Origin: Pelomyxa schiedti
Lineage: Eukaryota; Protista; Evosea
Assembly (NCBI GenBank): GCA_020536535.1
Contig: JAHLWZ010000873.1
Span: forward strand, 1 to 63,947
Direction: 5' to 3'
Length of the DNA: 63,947 bases
The notes under the pieces are model-generated. The model saw only the letters and a program-made list of their open reading frames with translations. It had not been told where the DNA came from and searched no databases. The position numbers were made by a program, and so were the translations under genes. The stretch's first letter is position 1. Each line of letters opens with the position of its first letter. Below are positions 4,318 to 21,400 of the stretch, piece by piece.

Positions 4318-7300
4318 CTACTGAGCCAACCACCGCCGGCAGTTCTTTGAACCACACAGGCATTTGGTTTTCTTCCGCCCACCAACCAACTTCATGCAGT
4401 AGTCAAATGTGAGCTCGGTGAGTGGTGGGATTTCCCTTGCTGAAAAAAACGCGATTCGAGGGAGCTGTTTGTTTTGTCAGTCATTTATGAGATTTGGTCG
4501 AGTACTCTTTTATCCAGGTGGTCTATCCAGAACCAGTATTGCACAAGGTTCGGCTCACAGCTATGATTGAGGAATCGAGCAATGTTCCCACAGCGGTCAG
4601 CATCTATACTTCATGCAGTTAGATACACGAAAACGAATTGAAAGTATACACGAAGGTAGTTGACCCTTCAATATCCAAATCAAAAAGGTAGGATACGTCA
4701 GAGCTGCGCCTACAAACCGAAAATGAGAAGAAGTGTAGGAGGAGGTCTTACTCTTGTGCTTCTTCATCAGTTATTAATTCTCCAATGTATTCCGCCACAA
4801 ACATCCCTTTTGGTATTGTACAAGTTGCTCTCAAACCCCACCCAGTGTGTGGAGTGCGAAATATCTAGTTCAGTACGGTCAGATTGGCATCGAAATGGTC
4901 ACCTCAACTTGAACAGGATACGGCCCTAACTTAAGAGAATTCTGTATGGTGCGAAGACTACATGATTCTGTGCAAGTACAGAAGCTATTACATTCGTATC
5001 TAACTAAACTTATAAATGAAAGAATTAAACATGAGGAAACTGCAAGTACATTGGGGAAGGTGGGGGAATTAGAATCTTGCCAGTGTCGTCAAATGGTTTG
5101 CCTGTGTGTTGGATTTGGTTACACTGTTTTTTTTTTGGAAAGAAAACTTACTGGAAATAAGATTTTCATTTTTGTTTTCTGTCATGCACTGGCAGTTGTC
5201 CAAACATACTCCCTGACAGAAATGGCAACAGGCCACAGCTGCACCCCATGGGACGGAAAAGGAAATCTTGCTCTCTCGTAACCACTGGCAAACGAAAAAA
5301 TTACTTTAAGCCTAATGGAATGAAAATGTACCTCGAATGCATCCTCAGGAAGAGGTGTGTGGTCAATTTCGTTCACTGCTGTCACAGGGATAGGATATAC
5401 TCCGTTGCTGATATCACCTGAGCAACTCCAAAAGTACCGTGTTGGTTGCATTAACAACATGGTACATGAATTCACTGTGCTACAAGGCCCGTTATCAGGT
5501 GGACTCCTTAAGATCGCAGGTTCATCACTTTTTGTTGCACAGACACTTGTTGATGAAATTGGTTCTATTTCTCCTGTACACGAACTTGAACTTGCTGCGG
5601 AATTGGGCACTTGAACAGAGGCCAACCCTGTGGAACTGTCCATGAGAGCATCGCAAGTTTGTTCTGTAACGCTCTCGTTATACACTGGTTTCATCTGAGG
5701 AGCACAAAGTCGTGGCCTTTTTGAAGAAGGCTTTGGTACCAGTTCCAGGCACCCGTTCTGTGCAAACTTGAAAAAGGGAAAGAGAGGGGAGAAGAATACC
5801 TTAATTTGTGAAACAGCAAGGAATAACTCATGAAGGATGACCCCCGAATCTGGCTTGGGGTCTAAGATGAATGATTTAAGTGCTTCTTTACATGTACGAC
5901 CGTCTCGCAGTGATTTCATCCTACAAAATGTACTTTATTTTCTTCTGCTTCTTCTGAGGTACCATACAAAATAGAACTGAACTGTTGCGTGCATGATAAC
6001 TTTTCCAGAGCCTAGAATACATCATCACTATAGTTGGGAAAAAAAGTTACAGGAACACACTGGTAGTAAATTTTCTGCATCGAAATCTTCGATGGGTGGT
6101 TCAGCGGGTCTGTAGTGCGTACTGATACAAGACAATTTCCTTCCAGTGATGGCAGCTAATGACGCAACAATTCCTTTTTTGGGGGTAATGAACGCTAACG
6201 ATATCTGGAGGGGAAAAAACCTGCGATATACACAGGCGGATATGAAAACTGAGCTAGCAGGTTTGACTCCTTCCGTGAGAGATGGTCTTTTGGGGGGTTA
6301 TTTCGGTGATCGACCCAAGTACTGTCGTAGTAAGAATCATTCACGAGATCAATTAGGGTCTGTGGAGCTGACACAGCCTTGAGCAATGCTATGCCCCGTG
6401 ATAATGTGGAGTCGGCACAAGAAGACGTGGAAACCAGAGCACACGGACCAGTGTCGGATGGCAAACATGTATCACGGGCCGGTAGTGGAAGGTCACGCGC
6501 CGAGCTCTCGTCTGTGGGGAGTTGACTTGAGTCCATTTCAGGTGTTGAAACTGTCGTAGAAGTGCTAGTGCAAATTATGCTGAGCGTACTTTCACAAACT
6601 TCGCTGAGTGCACTTGTGCGAGTTGTCTTGGCTGTGATTGTTGCAGGTTCGCTGTCCAACAGTAGATCAGGTTGTATTGTCTTTATAGACTGTGTACCGG
6701 ATGTTTCAACCTCTTCTCTGGTATCAATCTGTGACCCACACCTCGCTGTTTGCGAAGCGACTTCCAAACACACATCAGCACAGAGTTTGTTTTGATTGGG
6801 AAGTTGTGGAAGTTGATTGTCCGCACTCAATCCATTGGCAATGGTAGGAGATGTGCTTTCCTCACTGTCGGTTACTTCAATGAATTCCTCAGGGATCTCT
6901 TCTTCCTCCTCCTCTTCTTCTTCACTGGCATACTGAGTGTTATTGCAATCAGCCTCTGTTTGGACAACACTGTCCGCAGCATTGTTGATAGTCTGGACAG
7001 CAGGAACTTCCGACACAGTAGTAGCATCCGCAGTTCTCACAGGCTCTACTGTGCGCTCAACAATGGCAACTTCCTCATCATCGACGACTCTAACATCATC
7101 GTTTGTTGGGGCATCGTCATCATCTTCAATTATCACGGGAGCTTGGCTTGTGGTAACTCCAACGCTTGCCTTGAGGGACAACCTTTGGAGGACTAAAAGC
7201 TTATTATCAGGAGGTTCAATTTCCTGCTCATCCAGACCTTTAAAGGAGTAAGTTCCAAGGCACGGAGGTGTGCAATGAAAAAGTTAGGATCTTGGATAAT

Positions 7301-14423: not shown

Positions 14424-17418
14424 TTACGTTTTTTTGGTGGTCGTGGTTGTGGTTGTCGACTTCTTTTTTTTGGATTCAGTTTTGTTGATGCCGCTGTGTT
14501 TGTGGGCATCCTTCCTGCTCATCTTGCTGTGGTCACGGCAGCCCTTTCCGCCCTTTGGGAATGGATGTGAGTGGTTTTGTAAGAGTGGGTAAAAGTTACC
14601 TCCCAGAAGGAACCTCCCTTGCCGGAAAAATCGCTTGAGCACTTTGAACATTTGGTGTTTGAAGCTGTTTGTTCTGAACTACAGAATCCACATATCACAC
14701 GTGAGGCCCACTGTTGTTTCGTTAGGCTACTTGGAAATGAATGGAAATTGAGTACCTCCGCAACGTGATCGGAGTGTGTGTCATGGCATTGGTCACACGG
14801 CCAAGCTCTACCACAACATGGGAAGCGAAACCACCTGAAACTGTGCCCATAGTGCTTGCATGTTCCCTGAAAAGAAATTTCCAATCAGCAAATTAACACG
14901 TAGAGTGGAAATGTACAGTTTCTGGAAGTGGGCTCCCCAACTTAATGGCAGCCGCTTCCCTTGGATCCCGTGGTGCCTTTTTACGCACTACAATTGGAGC
15001 CTCAGGTGCAGCTTTTATTTTGGTGAATGTCACCCTGAAAACAGTTAGTTTCACTGTTTTTATTGCTTAAACTGGAAAATACCGGTCAATAGTAAAAGAA
15101 AGGTGTGCAAAACATTTACGACAAACTTCAGTGGCGCTTATCCCAAAAGGCTTATTCTTAAATAGAACTTCTTCAGTGCAACCCAGGCACACTGCAGAAA
15201 AAATACTACTCTGGTGCACTTCCAGGGGAGAACACACCTTACATACAGGTCATTGCGTTTGTTTGATAAGTTACTATACCTCGTTATCAATGTATCCAAT
15301 AACAGATGAGGATTCATGCACTGGTTCAGGTCGAAACAGGACATGAATTTCACAATGGCACTTTGAACACTCAACTGAATAAATTCAGCCGAATGAGGAA
15401 ATAGCAGCCTGGCAACATACTTGTCACTTTTTTAGATGGTCGTGCTCGGAGTTCAGCTTGTTGCCGGCACCGTGAACACAACACAACAAGTGCCAACTCT
15501 ACACACGACATAATGCCTATGCCACTATTTGCTTGTGGTGAGAAACATAAAATAGGTGTAGATCCACCTTAAAATCAGCTGGGGGATCTTGAGTTGGGTC
15601 CCTCTGTGAGCAGTAGCACTAGAGAAAGTTCCTTGAATTGGTGCTGGTGCTTCCTGTTCTTCCGCCGATTCACTATCGGATTCCACATTTTCCTCTTCAG
15701 AATCAGATGCCACTGGTGGTGGGCTTTGCCTAAGATATTATTCAGTCAAGACGGTATCAAGATTGAAGGTATCAACTTACTGTGGAGGAGGTTTGGGTGC
15801 AAATTCGGCTGGAGGTTTTGCAAGAGGCTTGTTTGTGGGTACAATTACTTGGATACCATGTTTGAAATCCTTTTCTGAATTTAGACCGTACTAAAAAGGG
15901 AAATAATGCAAACATTTGTGATAACTTTGTCAACCATAAGTTTTTCTAAATTAGCCAGCATCCACCGTAATAGTCCTTGGATCATCACTGGCTTTCCTGA
16001 GTATGCTTGCTTTGCTCTTCTCACAACTGCATCAGTGATGTTCCTTTGAACAAATGAGTTGACAACAACAATAAACTCTTCCTTCTACCTGCCAACTTTT
16101 AGAGGTATATTGGAGTTGAGGAGATGAAATAAACAAGGGTCATTTGGGTAGCTCGTTGGCAGCTCAACACGCACAATCAATTTGTTGCCGTCAATATCAA
16201 AGGGGAAATCAGAGGGAAGAGGAAGGGCAAAGACCAGTTTCACAGGAGGAGAGAGACTGCAGGGAATCAATGGACAAAAGGTCAAATATGTTAAGTACCA
16301 TTCTATTTTGCAGTTTTCCCTGTATTGTTTAACAAGATCTGCAATTTCTCCTTCCCAAGGGTATTTTTCCTGTTACTTTGGTGAACAGAGGACTTCAAAG
16401 AAAGAGGAACTTACAACAACAGCTTTGGGTTTGAGAATACTAGCAAATTCCTGGTTGGTTGGGGGCCGAGTAGTGGCTAATACTGCAAGCCCACCCACAA
16501 GGGAACCGTTCATATTTTGTGCTACAATTTCTGCGTCATCCGGTTTTTCAGTGCAGATGATAGCACAACCAGTGCTTTTTCCACTTTTAGTCCCAATAAT
16601 CCTCACTTCTGTCCTTGGTACAGTAGGTGAGTATTTACTCACTGCAGGCGATATTATCTTCACTGTTTATTTTACAGATTGGGGAAAGAGAGTTCTTACG
16701 GTATAATATGGGTTGTTTTGATAACAGTTGCAACAAATTCACTTTCTGTCAGAGTCCTGGGAAGCCCAATAAAGAACACCATGTGCCTTTGAGCAGCTGT
16801 TTCCACTGGAGATGAACTAGCGCCCCCACTAGCTGAACATGAAGAGCCGTTAATGTCAGGAACCACAGTACCCTCTGTGGGAGTAGAGTGCGTTGAGGTT
16901 ATTGTTGCTTGATTTGATTCAGTTGGTGTAGTTGTAGAGGACGATTCGTTCACCCCTTGAGGGGCTGGAACCGTTGGCGTAGGGTGAGACTTATAAGTTA
17001 TAAACGTGTTGAGCTTGGGCTTCGGATTTGAGCTTAGTGGATTGTTGATGACAGCAGAAGCTTGTGGCACAAACACTGCCGCGTGTGGGGACATAGTTGA
17101 AGTGGGGGGTAGCGTCCGAGGTTGGGGCTGGCACTGCATTGGAGCAGGGGAGTGGCAGGAGCCAACATTCGGACCGACTCTAGGGGTTGGAGACACGGGC
17201 ATCATGTTGGGCCAAGAAGAGACAGGGGAAGCGTAAGTGGGGTTAGCTGCTGGCTGAGTGTTGAACGAGCACTGATACTGCGGATAGTAGTAAGGCGTCG
17301 CAGTTGGCTGCGCGTACGACGCGGGAAACGGCTGGTATTGCTGGGCAACATTATTACCATACGTGACTGCATATGGGGAGTAGAAAGGGGTTGCCGAAGG
17401 AAAGTTGGCCTGCTGCAT
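14424..17418 (-). CDS. PAM2-like motif, RRM, RWD-like domain and CHY zinc finger protein
   Basis: MSPHAAVFVP (PAM2-like); VFFIGLPRTLTESEF..KSTGCAII..AQNMNG (RRM); PSDFPFDI..VELPTSYPNDP (RWD/UBC-like); GTCKHYGHSFRWFRFPCCGRAWPCDQCHD..VICGFCSSEQ..KCSKC..GGKGCRD (CHY). Confidence 0.75.
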
Positions 17419-17751
17419 CCCCTTGCGTGATTTATTTGTTTTTTGATGAAAGCTGAGGAGGGGGCCCAATTTCTGTCTTTGCGGAAGTAGTTGGCCGGCG
17501 GAGTTGTCATTCTGTGTTCGGTGTGGAATTCTCTTGGCTTTGGCAGCTGGGACTGGGGTGATAGAATAAAGGAATCATCGAGAGTTCTATCCGAAGGAGA
17601 TGTTTCTTCAAAAATCAATTGCAATGTTTTCCCCTTTGTTCACATCTATTTTTCAAGAAGTTGTTGGTGCTACGCCACCGAAGGTTCACTGTGCATACCA
17701 AGGCAACACCGGATCTACGACACTACAACACCACACCGCTGTAGTTGTGAC

Positions 17752-18459
17752 ATGGGGAACTTCATCGTAACCATACTGATGGAATCGCCGTACTTGTGGG
17801 CGTGCACGGGGTTGGCCTTGTGCATTGGCCTTTCGGTTGTTGGTTCTTCTTGGTATGGTTGTTTCTCGTTTTTGCGCCGTTTTTTCACACGCGTTTTTGA
17901 AGGGGTATTTGGACAATCGGCACGGCTACCTTGGGTGTATCTATTCACAAAGGCAGATTAGAAACTCGTAATTTGGTTAGGTGGGTCTTTTTTTTTAATT
18001 TTTCATTTCTTGTGATTTATCCATGGTTTGAGTTTTACTGCAAGTAGTAACCTTTGTTACCAGTATACTGTTTTGTGAAGCTCTATCCATTTACGGCATT
18101 ATCGTATCTATCATCATGACCACAAAAGCACAAACCCAAGCATGTTGGCCAATTGCTGCCAACGACTACATGGCTGGTTACCAAATGTTTTCAGCCGGTC
18201 TTATCACTGGCTTCTGCAATATGCTTGCTGGGTAAGTTTTATCTACTACAATACACAGCCACACTTCCTTTTCCACTTACGACACACAAGATTTACACTG
18301 GGAATTGTGGGCAAAGGCATAGCCGTCTCCACAGCGGCTGTTGCCACTCTGTTTGTGAAGTTGTTGATTGTCTTGATTTTTGGCGAAGTCCTTGGATTGT
18401 ATGGCATGATTGTGTCACTTATTGAGACAGGCAATGCCTCGTTTACCTCATGTGCGTGA
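17752..18459 (+). CDS. VMA16: V-type H+-ATPase proteolipid subunit c'' (Vma16/ATP6V0B-like), 4 exons
   Basis: SPYLWACTGLALCIGLSVVGSSWGIW..RNLVSILFCEALSIYG matches Vma16; the last helix FVKLLIVLIFGEVLGLYG is subunit-c-like. Confidence 0.9.
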
Positions 18460-18498: not shown

Positions 18499-21400
18499 TC
18501 AAAACACAACAACCGTTTGGAACTGTAGAGGTACATTAACAGGGAACACCAGCATAGTCCCATTCACATTTGCTTGTACATCTAATTTGCGAAATCACCT
18601 TACTGAAATAAGATAACTACATACAATATTCAAAGTCCGAAGGGGTCGCTGCCGTGGGAAGTTGTACAGTGTACACTTGTCTTCCCTGACTCACAAGGGA
18701 CATAGCGTATTCCAGGAAACTTTCTGGAATGTGTTTGAGTGGTATTTATGGTGAATTGAAAAAACAAACCATCCTCCCCGAGAAGCCGCATGAAGAGTGA
18801 AAGTTCAGGAGGCGTGACTTGTGGGGCACTTAGTACCATGGCACTCAGTTCAAATTGTTCTGTAGCAAGCATGGTGTCACGTGGGGTTGGTATAATCAGC
18901 CGAGGAGTGCTGCCAAGATATGTGGAAGACGGTACTGCATCGGGTGGAAGATCGGAATACGAAGCATTACACGAATTTATGTAGATACTGTTCCTCCAAG
19001 CTGAGCCACACATTTCACTCTGGTCACCACCGCATGGCATATCTTCATAACAATGCTAAGAGATGAGATGGAAAGATGGAATTTACTGCACTCAGAGTCA
19101 TCAACGCGGCCGTATTCGCCAAAAGAGTCACCACAGAAGCAGTAAGTGGAATATTGAAGACCATAATACTTGTAGGGGGGTGACCGTAGGATTGCGCATG
19201 CATATGAACACATCAAAACGGTCATGGAAGCGTCTGAGAAACTATATCCATCAAGGTCACGATCGGAGGAGTCAATATAGCAACCCAGATACTCACTAAA
19301 GAAAGAATAAGAAGAATGACATGGAAGAAAAAATTTCACCTTGGTGAGGGTTCAGAACAACCACTGAGGATTCCAGCAAGTATGGCACCAGGAGCACCAA
19401 TTGCTAACGGTGTGTTATGCTGCTCCATGTTCTATAATAAGGATTTAATAAATAAATAGACAAAAAGATGATGTAAGGGAACCATGATAGTACCCAGCTC
19501 TCCTGTGCTGGTGACAGTTGCTTGAAGATTCGTCATCATACTGTTCCATAAGCCTACCATTTCCACCCGAATTGGTAGTGCGGTGTCAATTGCCACTTGT
19601 TTTCTTATGTCTGGGTTGTCAATTGCCAGAACAAGGTTTAATGCTGCCTCAAGTTGTGCCCAGGCACATTCAACGTGGGCCATATCACGCATGTAGTAAA
19701 AACTATTAAGCCAGTAATCGAAATTATCCAAATAAACTATGTCCTGAAATGTCCCATTACTTGAGGAACAAGTAAGGGAGATGGAAGTCACTGTAATCTG
19801 CTCTCTTAGGGCCGTTAGCTTATCAACAAAGTCGTATTCTTGGGCTACTCTATCCCATAACTCAGAGTTTGGCACCATTCCACCCGGCCCGTTGGTCCAA
19901 GTTGCCGGAGTTGGCAGATCTAATTGGCACTTAGCCTTAAAAGCAAAGGGAAACTTAACTCACTGAAGCTGTCAATCGACTCAAAAATTGAGGCAATGCT
20001 TGGTCCTGCATCGGGGCCAAACTGACTTACAGACCAATCATTCCAAAACATTTCTGGTGTGAGAGAGGTATCCCAAGTAACTTGTGAAAGTGCACTGATC
20101 GTGGGACTTGTAGCTACCGTTCTCCACATTATTCCAGGAAGACCCTCGCACCCATATGACAAAGCATCTTTTGCGTGTTCAATAGTTCTTCTCGATTTGA
20201 GTTCTTTCGTGGTAAAATGAAGATAAACCTTGATACCCATAGCTGTGGAGCAGTAAGTGAGGGGTCATCTTCCATCCAAGGGATATCCCATTTTCTATGG
20301 TTTTTCACATCTGCATAAGCGGGATCTACAGCACTTTTTCCAACCTGTTGATCAATGGAACTCAAAATGTATTCCGAAGGAAGAACATCATCGAAGTAAG
20401 CTCTGCCACGACACAGTCAAAATTCCAAAATAAAAGAAAGAAGGAACCTGTTTGGTGAGGGTCCTAAAACCCATCCACATGTAGCCAGTTGGAAGGTGGC
20501 ATTGACAAGATTCCTTGCAGTAAAAGCATCGTTCATATCTTGTACTGCCTGCTGTACAATTGTATCATTTTGTTGATAACTGAGAAGGTTCAGAAAACCA
20601 ACTAGCAATTATTGCTTACTTGGACCATTCCCAATCTTCACTTGTCCACACCCAGTAATAGTCAATATCATATGTCTTACTTATTCTGTCAAATATTCCA
20701 GAATAATATGTGACAGAATCGATAGACTGATCTGGTTTTGCCAGTGGAGTTTCGGTTCCGACACAAGTTTTGAGTTGTAAGGCATGAGCATAGGCAAACG
20801 ACTGGCTGAGTAAGTTTCCAGCACTATTAAAGACGGTATTATCATCCGCATTGGTTGTTGGAACTGGGCAAAAAGCACCAGTATTGATGTTGGAAAGGCC
20901 TTGTGTGCAATCACTGGAGTAGAGGAGTGCACTGCCATAACTGAAAACGGGAGAGTCACACCAACTACCCGGAAATTGTTGAACTACACACTAATAATTG
21001 CTTGTTGTTTTGGGTAAATAACCCCAATCTCCACGCAAGGAAGTCATGTATGAGGTGGGATATGATACCTTCACATAATTAAAATGAGAAAGTTTGAGGG
21101 TTGTACTTTACCTTTACAGTCCCATCAGAATTGAAATCACTATCAGTACCAACCCATACAGTTGGTTCATAAAGTGGGTAGGTATGTAGTCCTATAAAAT
21201 TCATTTTCATCTTGGATATTTGGGTTGCATGGTGGTTGTACTCCTGGAAAAAACGAAGTTTTGAGTCAAAAAAAGCAGCAGGAGGATGAAACCTGCACAC
21301 CCCACCAGTCTGGTCCCTCAGGAAAATCATGAAACGGTTGCAGACCGCGAACATCAAAATCGGGTGAGAGATATACTTTGTCAAACAAGGGAATTTCCAA

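What the first reader, a model, noticed from the sequence alone, without database searches (positions are those of the whole stretch)
17752..18459. V-ATPase c'' proteolipid with two proton-binding glutamate motifs (c''/c hybrid)
Seen: hairpin 1 has the c''-type site ILFCEALSIYG (GAA at 18077-18079) and hairpin 2 has the subunit-c-type site LIFGEVLGLYG (GAA at 18385-18387). Known: eukaryotic V-ATPase proteolipids carry one essential Glu per four helices. Yeast Vma16 ends FVKILVIEIFGSILGLLG (Ser at this position) while Vma3 ends FVGMILILIFAEVLGLYG. One carboxylate per hairpin is the ATP-synthase arrangement and gives a higher ion/ATP ratio. Inference: this subunit adds a proton site to the ring; if present in several copies it would change the coupling ratio and could favour low-cost pumping or reversibility in an anaerobe. 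The Lys in GIVGKG is also atypical. This is my best candidate for an undescribed system here.
Basis: partly seen in the sequence, partly recalled or inferred. Interest (0 to 1): 0.8.

Follow-up and report, generated by a model that had tools for sequence, protein, structure and literature searches.

The report
V-ATPase c'' with extra c-type glutamate
An anaerobic amoeba's proton-pump rotor subunit (V-ATPase c'') carries a second, c-type proton-binding glutamate that would fill the usual gap in the rotor ring. Its relatives and a few other protists share the change, and no paper describing it was found in the library searched.

Summary
Window 17752-18459 (+) is a four-exon gene of Pelomyxa schiedti. 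Its 171-aa product (P0001, misnamed at NCBI) is a four-helix V-ATPase c'' (Vma16/ATP6V0B) orthologue.

- **Both glutamates are real.** It has the universal c'' Glu (E65, FCEA). It also has a Glu (E148, LIFGEVLGLYG) in exact register with the proton-carrying Glu of c subunits.
Canonical c'' already has a second Glu one helical turn earlier (xEIFxS). Here that residue is Leu, so the second Glu is in a new register, not an addition.
- **It is not an error.** A second paralogue, Mastigella, Rhizomastix and an environmental archamoebid contig share the motif, with many synonymous differences around it.
- **It is rare.** About 7 of roughly 125 scorable c'' cluster representatives have it, including Pygsuia and Carpediemonas. 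The anaerobe Sawyeria is canonical.
- **Origins are unresolved.** Trees favour at least three gains, but one origin is not rejected (AU p 0.10).

Most likely E148 is an extra proton site that closes the "0-glu" gap of the c-ring, giving n+1 protons per turn. This is inferred from sequence and homology only. A structural role, or a pairing with the co-occurring Lys124, remains possible. I rate it a new variant of a known kind, of moderate to high interest.

The parts
17752..17852 (+). exon 1 (Met1 to the first two bases of Trp34): N-terminus and most of helix 1. There is no extra N-terminal transmembrane helix, as in plant c''.
   Evidence: model helices
17853..17902 (+). intron 1, 50 nt, GT..AG
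17903..17980 (+). exon 2: end of helix 1, luminal turn, start of helix 2
17981..18063 (+). intron 2, 83 nt, GT..AG
18064..18231 (+). exon 3: helix 2 with the c''-type site (FCEALSIYG), the loop, and most of helix 3
18077..18079 (+). GAA, Glu65: the universal c'' carrier carboxylate (yeast Vma16 E108 equivalent)
   Evidence: invariant in alignment A2
18232..18290 (+). intron 3, 59 nt, GT..AG
18291..18459 (+). exon 4 with stop codon: end of helix 3 (GIVGKG), cytoplasmic turn, and helix 4 with the c-type site (LIFGEVLGLYG)
18313..18315 (+). AAA, Lys124: Ser in canonical c'', Asp in c. It co-occurs with the c-type Glu in Archamoebae and Pygsuia only.
18373..18375 (+). TTG, Leu144: the position of the conserved second Glu of canonical c'' (yeast E188 equivalent), lost here
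18385..18387 (+). GAA, Glu148: a carboxylate at the position of the carrier Glu of c and c' subunits (Ser in canonical c'')

Best explanation
The gene encodes the c'' proteolipid of the Pelomyxa schiedti V-ATPase rotor ring, a four-helix subunit. Besides the carboxylate that every c'' has on its first outer helix (E65), it has a second carboxylate (E148) on its second outer helix. E148 sits at the depth and register of the proton-carrying Glu of c subunits, inside a c-like motif (F-x-E-x-L-x-L-Y-G on both helices). The usual c'' Glu one turn earlier has become Leu. In known rings the shifted c'' site leaves two adjacent glutamates on one side and a roughly 36 A stretch with no glutamate on the other, the '0-glu' transition. 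E148 lies on the first helix of that stretch. The ring would therefore carry one more proton site (11 instead of 10 per 3 ATP if the ring is c9c''1) and have no glutamate-free gap. Expected consequences are slightly more protons per ATP at a slightly lower maximal gradient, removal of the slowest rotation step, and loss of one proposed brake on proton leak through free Vo. Shown: the gene model, c'' orthology, residue identity and register, conservation, and rarity. Inferred: that E148 faces lipid and subunit a and carries protons, the ring composition, and every physiological consequence.
For: - c'' orthology by sequence and fold.
- E148 aligns without gaps with the Glu of this genome's own c subunits, and with E65 in the hairpin-1 versus hairpin-2 alignment.
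- E65 and E148 are each mid-helix, in helices 55-81 and 135-163 of a confident model.
- Three substitutions relative to the c'' consensus (S to E, A to V, F to Y) all move towards the c consensus.
- The motif is invariant across two paralogues, Mastigella, Rhizomastix and contig L008 despite many synonymous changes.
- The stator is canonical: three subunit-a genes all keep the essential Arg motif.
- The c genes have a single site, so the extra site is specific to c''.
- The trait recurs in Pygsuia, Carpediemonas and four unnamed eukaryotic lineages. A careful tree without the trait columns needs 4 changes, and 0 of 200 bootstrap trees show one origin.
- Literature frame: one lipid-exposed Glu per proteolipid, asymmetric ring, 10 H+ per 3 ATP (PMC10003446). 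The 0-glu gap between the c'' Glu and the next carrier is estimated as the slowest step and a cause of Vo autoinhibition (PMC7541076).
Against: - There is no experimental or structural evidence for this protein, and no ring model.
- Canonical c'' already has a Glu one turn away. From my memory of Hirata et al. 1997 (not retrieved here) that Glu is dispensable, so a Glu in this helix need not carry protons.
- Lys124 co-occurs with E148 in two lineages and sits about one turn above it. It might neutralise E148.
- With one c'' per ring the change in ratio is only about 10%.
- Read-level support for expression in this species could not be obtained.
Confidence: 0.5

Rival explanations
1. E148 is not an extra proton carrier. 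The conserved, non-essential second Glu of c'' has merely moved one helical turn (position 144 to 148). It keeps whatever structural or assembly role that residue has, possibly charge-paired with Lys124. Ring stoichiometry and coupling are unchanged.
For: In Archamoebae, Pygsuia and P0041 the gain at 148 goes with loss of the Glu at 144, giving L/M at 144 and E at 148. Lys124 appears only in sequences with E148 and sits about one turn above it on the neighbouring helix.
Against: Carpediemonas, P0103 and P0037 keep the Glu at 144 and add E148, so they carry three Glu and the change is not a simple relocation. Most dual-Glu lineages lack the Lys. The whole motif converges on the c-type carrier site, and the register is exactly that of c. 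A mid-membrane carboxylate on an outer ring helix must pass the subunit-a Arg on every turn.
Confidence: 0.3
2. The dual-site c'' is present in several copies, or forms most of the ring. That would give an A/F-like rotor with a carboxylate on nearly every outer helix, a much higher H+/ATP ratio, and possibly reversible (ATP-synthesising) operation in these anaerobes.
For: There are two c'' paralogues in the genome against two c genes. Methanogen double-hairpin c subunits with two sites are an established precedent (bioRxiv 10.64898/2026.10.01.756066).
Against: Every solved eukaryotic ring has exactly one c''. Normal single-site c genes are retained. There are no data on stoichiometry.
Confidence: 0.1
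3. The finding is an artefact: a sequencing error, a mis-spliced model or a pseudogene.
For: None found. The NCBI product name is wrong, but its protein sequence matches the model.
Against: The gene has clean GT-AG introns and an intact frame. The same residues occur in a paralogue, in two transcriptomes of related genera and in an environmental contig, with a purifying-selection pattern.
Confidence: 0.01

Closest known systems
V-ATPase subunit c'' (yeast Vma16, human ATP6V0B, plant VHA-c'')
   Same: It gives the best sequence and fold match. It shares the FCEA carrier Glu on the first outer helix, the FVK motif and two ATP-synt_C repeats. Like plant c'', it is a four-helix form without the extra N-terminal helix.
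   Different: The consensus last helix is xEIFxS..GLFG. Here the Glu one turn up is Leu, the Ser is Glu and the Phe is Tyr. Lys replaces Ser in GIVGSG.
V-ATPase subunits c and c' (Vma3/Vma11, ATP6V0C)
   Same: The last-helix site LIF-x-E-x-L-x-LYG is in identical register.
   Different: c has no Glu on helix 2. The overall sequence and fold are closer to c''. The motif was not copied from this genome's own c genes, which read LIFSEALALYG.
Duplicated double-hairpin c subunits of methanogen A-type ATP synthases, with one ion site per hairpin
   Same: Four helices with two carboxylate sites, which raises the number of ions per rotation.
   Different: These are prokaryotic homo-oligomeric rings of near-identical hairpins. 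Here the subunit is a eukaryotic c'' orthologue, presumably a single subunit in a mixed ring. The resemblance is in how it works, not in family membership.
Acetobacterium woodii hybrid c-ring (4bem)
   Same: A mixed ring in which one special subunit changes the site count and spacing.
   Different: There the special subunit removes a site from an F-type Na+ ring. Here it would add a site to a V-type ring.

Membership tests
V-ATPase c'' proteolipid (Vma16/ATP6V0B) | Two ATP-synt_C hairpin repeats forming a four-helix core | tested here: met
   PF00137 matches twice, 80 bits. The model has four long helices, pLDDT 93.9.
V-ATPase c'' proteolipid (Vma16/ATP6V0B) | Closer to c'' than to c or c' in sequence and structure | tested here: met
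   The exons hit c'' chains best. Foldseek TM is 0.89-0.92 to c'' against about 0.82 to c. It sits within the c'' set in the trees.
V-ATPase c'' proteolipid (Vma16/ATP6V0B) | Carrier Glu on the first outer helix (FCEA; yeast E108) | tested here: met
   E65, codon 18077-18079; invariant column in alignment A2.
V-ATPase c'' proteolipid (Vma16/ATP6V0B) | Last helix without a Glu at the c position (Ser/Gly/Thr), with a Glu one turn earlier (xEIFxS) | tested here: not met
   Here L144 and E148. The canonical pattern is found in 192 of about 225 scorable relatives. This is the variant feature, not grounds for exclusion, because orthology is clear.
V-ATPase c'' proteolipid (Vma16/ATP6V0B) | One copy per ring, contacting subunit d | not testable with these tools
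   This needs a purified complex or a structure.
V-ATPase c / c' proteolipid (Vma3/Vma11) | Single carrier Glu on helix 4 and none on helix 2 | tested here: not met
   The helix 4 Glu is present, but helix 2 also has one. The genome's true c genes on C93 and C820 fit the definition.
Two-site double-hairpin c subunits of archaeal A-type ATP synthases | One carboxylate per hairpin in a four-helix subunit, of archaeal or bacterial K/c lineage | tested here: inconclusive
   The two-site criterion is met at sequence level. The lineage criterion is not: NCBIfam prokaryotic K-subunit models score far below their cut-offs, and the nearest relatives are eukaryotic c''.

The most novel reading that the evidence does not exclude
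Several lineages of anaerobic protists (Archamoebae, breviates, fornicate metamonads) independently rebuilt c'' into a two-site subunit. This abolishes the universal asymmetry of the eukaryotic c-ring. It raises H+/ATP and removes the glutamate-free gap, so the pump works at a low cellular phosphorylation potential, possibly without Vo autoinhibition or reversibly.
Probability: 0.15. Interest if true: 0.8.

Novelty: new variant of a known kind. Interest (0 to 1): 0.58.

Why it matters
Reviews and structures describe eukaryotic V-ATPase rings as carrying exactly one carrier glutamate per proteolipid. The c'' site is out of phase, which creates an asymmetric ring, a fixed ratio of about 10 H+ per 3 ATP, and a glutamate-free gap proposed to be the slowest step of rotation and a brake on leak through free Vo.

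A naturally occurring, conserved c'' with a c-type glutamate on both outer helices is a ready-made test of those ideas. It predicts an n+1 ring without the gap. If the association with anaerobic protists holds on wider sampling, it would also be a rare case of bioenergetic tuning of the V-ATPase coupling ratio in eukaryotes. Until now such tuning is known from archaeal and bacterial rotors.

Tried and rejected
2. **Literature.** Searches for E188/Glu188 of Vma16, for V-ATPase proteolipids in Archamoebae or protists, and for Pelomyxa V-ATPase found nothing relevant. 'Not described' therefore rests on a library that lacks most subscription journals. The dispensability of yeast E188 is from my memory only.
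3. **Word-index protein searches.** The exon-4 open frame with a region, P0001 alone, and a profile of dual-Glu sequences gave few hits or were swamped by fungal c''. The c'' of Entamoeba, Mastigamoeba, Giardia, Trichomonas and Blastocystis were not identified, so the taxonomic range and the anaerobe link are under-sampled.
4. **ESM Atlas look-up.** It gave only generic proteolipid clusters.
5. **Contexts of the unnamed dual-Glu proteins.** The organisms remain unknown. A parabasalid origin for P0155 is only a guess.
6. **Recombination or gene conversion with c.** Rejected: exon 4 is still c''-like, and the genome's own c motif differs.
7. **Single versus multiple origin.** Unresolved. Single-clade AU p is 0.73 on a quick 84-row tree and 0.098 on a careful 49-row tree. 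The careful tree's starred branches force at least 3 changes.

Procedure note: tool searches were done exon by exon by reference, and then with the identical database protein P0001. The exons were joined only inside one script, to test identity with P0001.

Full report
**1. What is in the sequence**

Window 17752-18459 (+) holds a four-exon gene: 17752-17852, 17903-17980, 18064-18231 and 18291-18459. Its three GT-AG introns are 50, 83 and 59 nt long. I first searched the exons one by one by reference. A word search with the stop-free frame around exon 4 then returned a database protein of 171 aa, P0001. It comes from a 63,947-base contig of Pelomyxa schiedti, which is this window. Joining the exons inside a script, only to test identity, gave exactly P0001. 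All later full-length work used P0001. NCBI calls the protein 'C Jun amino terminal kinase interacting protein', which is wrong.

**2. What it is**

- Exon 3 and exon 4 each hit V-ATPase c'' chains best in the PDB (citrus, human, rat, bovine, yeast). c and c' score clearly lower.
- Pfam finds two ATP-synt_C repeats.
- An AlphaFold model built on 50 relatives is confident (pLDDT 93.9). It has helices 13-50, 55-81, 92-132 and 135-163.
- The model superposes on human and yeast c'' at TM 0.89-0.92 (rmsd 1.6-2.0 A), and on c at about 0.82.
- There is no extra N-terminal helix, as in plant c'' (PMC10003446).
- The genome (52 Mb) has four proteolipid genes. Two are ordinary c genes on C93 and C820, with no Glu on helix 2 and LIFSEALALYG on helix 4. 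Two are c'' genes, this one and one on C171 (P0004).
- Three subunit-a genes all keep the essential Arg motif.

**3. The two glutamates**

E65 (GAA 18077-79) lies in FCEALSIYG and is invariant in c''. E148 (GAA 18385-87) lies in LIFGEVLGLYG.

PDB alignments show the canonical last helix as IVEIFGSAIGLFG (human) or VIEIFGSALGLFG (plants). Canonical c'' therefore has a Glu at the position that is Leu144 here, and a Ser at the position that is Glu148 here. The second Glu is therefore in a new register, not simply added.

E148 aligns without gaps with the carrier Glu of this organism's own c subunits. It also aligns with E65 when hairpin 1 is aligned to hairpin 2. Both lie mid-helix. Relative to the c'' consensus, the three changes (S to E, A to V, F to Y) all move towards the c consensus. 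The exon nevertheless remains c''-like (FVK, best hits c'') and differs from the genome's own c motif. This is convergence, not recombination.

**4. It is not an error, and it is under selection**

The same motif, including Lys124, is present in four further sequences:
- the C171 paralogue;
- the Mastigella eilhardi transcriptome (P0002);
- the Rhizomastix libera transcriptome (P0003);
- a 35% GC environmental contig (L008), whose last exon I read directly.

Over 45 codons of the last exon, the window and L008 differ at 25 synonymous and 7 non-synonymous codons, with the site invariant.

**5. How common it is**

An exhaustive phmmer search of P0001 against 1.84 billion cluster representatives returned 150 best hits, essentially all of them c''. 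In the alignment, the canonical E / E / S pattern holds in 87 of them.

A Glu at the c position occurs in seven representatives:
- P0004, the Archamoebae cluster;
- P0031, Pygsuia biforma;
- P0106, Carpediemonas membranifera;
- the unnamed metagenomic P0041, P0037, P0068 and P0103.

Adding 113 further c'' from a profile search, 192 of about 225 scorable sequences are canonical.

Named canonical taxa include Dictyostelium (the closest aerobic relative sampled), Populus, Cyanidioschyzon, Babesia, many fungi and animals, and the anaerobic heterolobosean Sawyeria. That the named carriers are all anaerobes or microaerophiles is my own background knowledge. With three or four lineages and one counter-example it is a lead, not a result.

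A careful tree without the trait's own columns needs four changes. Well-supported branches force at least three, and 0 of 200 bootstrap trees show a single origin. Pygsuia sits with canonical sequences. However, the AU test does not reject a single clade: p is 0.098 on the careful 49-row tree and 0.73 on a larger quick tree. The number of origins is therefore open.

**6. How it most likely works**

Established frame:
- Each proteolipid has one lipid-exposed carrier Glu, on helix 4 in c and on helix 2 in c''.
- This gives an asymmetric ring and 10 H+ per 3 ATP (PMC10003446).
- It also produces one roughly 36 A transition with none, between the c'' Glu and the next carrier.
- That second transition is estimated as the slowest step, and is proposed as one of two causes of autoinhibition of free Vo (PMC7541076).

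Inference for this protein:
- E148 sits on the outer helix that opens that gap.
- A ring with this c'' would have n+1 sites (11 if c9c''1; 3.67 instead of 3.33 H+/ATP) and no glutamate-free stretch.
- Expected effects are modestly cheaper pumping at a slightly lower maximal gradient, smoother rotation, and a weaker intrinsic block on proton leak.

None of this is measured. My confidence is about 0.5.

**7. Rivals**

- **(a) One-turn relocation.** E148 is a relocation of the conserved second c'' Glu. I recall that Glu as dispensable in yeast (Hirata et al. 1997), but I could not retrieve the paper. E148 may be paired with Lys124. Lys124 occurs only with E148, in Archamoebae and Pygsuia, and sits about one turn above it. 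Against this, three lineages keep the earlier Glu and add the new one, and most carriers lack the Lys. Confidence about 0.3.
- **(b) Several c'' copies per ring.** This would give an A/F-like rotor. It is possible in principle, since methanogen two-site double hairpins are a precedent, but nothing here supports it. Confidence about 0.1.
- **(c) Artefact.** Refuted by the evidence in section 4.

**8. Limits**

- Literature searches found no description of a c'' with a c-type second glutamate, but the library is incomplete.

**9. Verdict**

This is a new variant of a known subunit: rare, conserved within Archamoebae, recurrent elsewhere, and mechanistically interesting because it removes a supposedly universal asymmetry of the eukaryotic c-ring.

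Noticed in passing
window 17752-18459: The NCBI product name for this gene's protein (P0001) is 'C Jun amino terminal kinase interacting protein'. Sequence and fold show it is V-ATPase c''. The paralogue P0004 is named 'V-type ATPase, C subunit'.
   Followed up: yes
G000 contigs C693:115135-118097, C829:7986-11003, C1027:15872-19022 (loci L014-L019): There are three separate V-ATPase subunit-a genes in this genome. All keep the ASYLRLWALSLAH motif with the essential Arg.
   Followed up: partly
L008:378-900 (ENA ERZ28594648 scaffold_90264): A 900-base, 35% GC metagenome contig carries an intron-split c'' gene of an uncultured archamoebid-like organism. It has the same GKG and LIVLIFGEVLGLYG features. 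The gene caller stopped at the intron (P0006).
   Followed up: yes
L009-L012 (ENA ERZ250393xx, Logan ERR14244250), gene at 6001-6504: A very divergent dual-Glu c'' (P0155) lies on compact, intron-poor, 31% GC eukaryotic contigs up to 128 kb, next to a Cpn10 gene. The organism is unknown.
   Followed up: partly
proteins P0007 (1139 aa), P0038 (631 aa), P0148 (1017 aa): These are giant proteolipids with 5-9 matched hairpin stretches. In P0007 and P0038 each carries a Glu in an LAEALAIYG-like motif, reminiscent of the 13-hairpin Methanopyrus c subunit.
   Followed up: no
window 16696-17469 (-) and 18630-19339 (-): The flanking open frames are a Pro/Gln/Ser-rich protein upstream and a Cys-rich frame downstream, both on the opposite strand. 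They show no evident functional link to the proteolipid gene.
   Followed up: no
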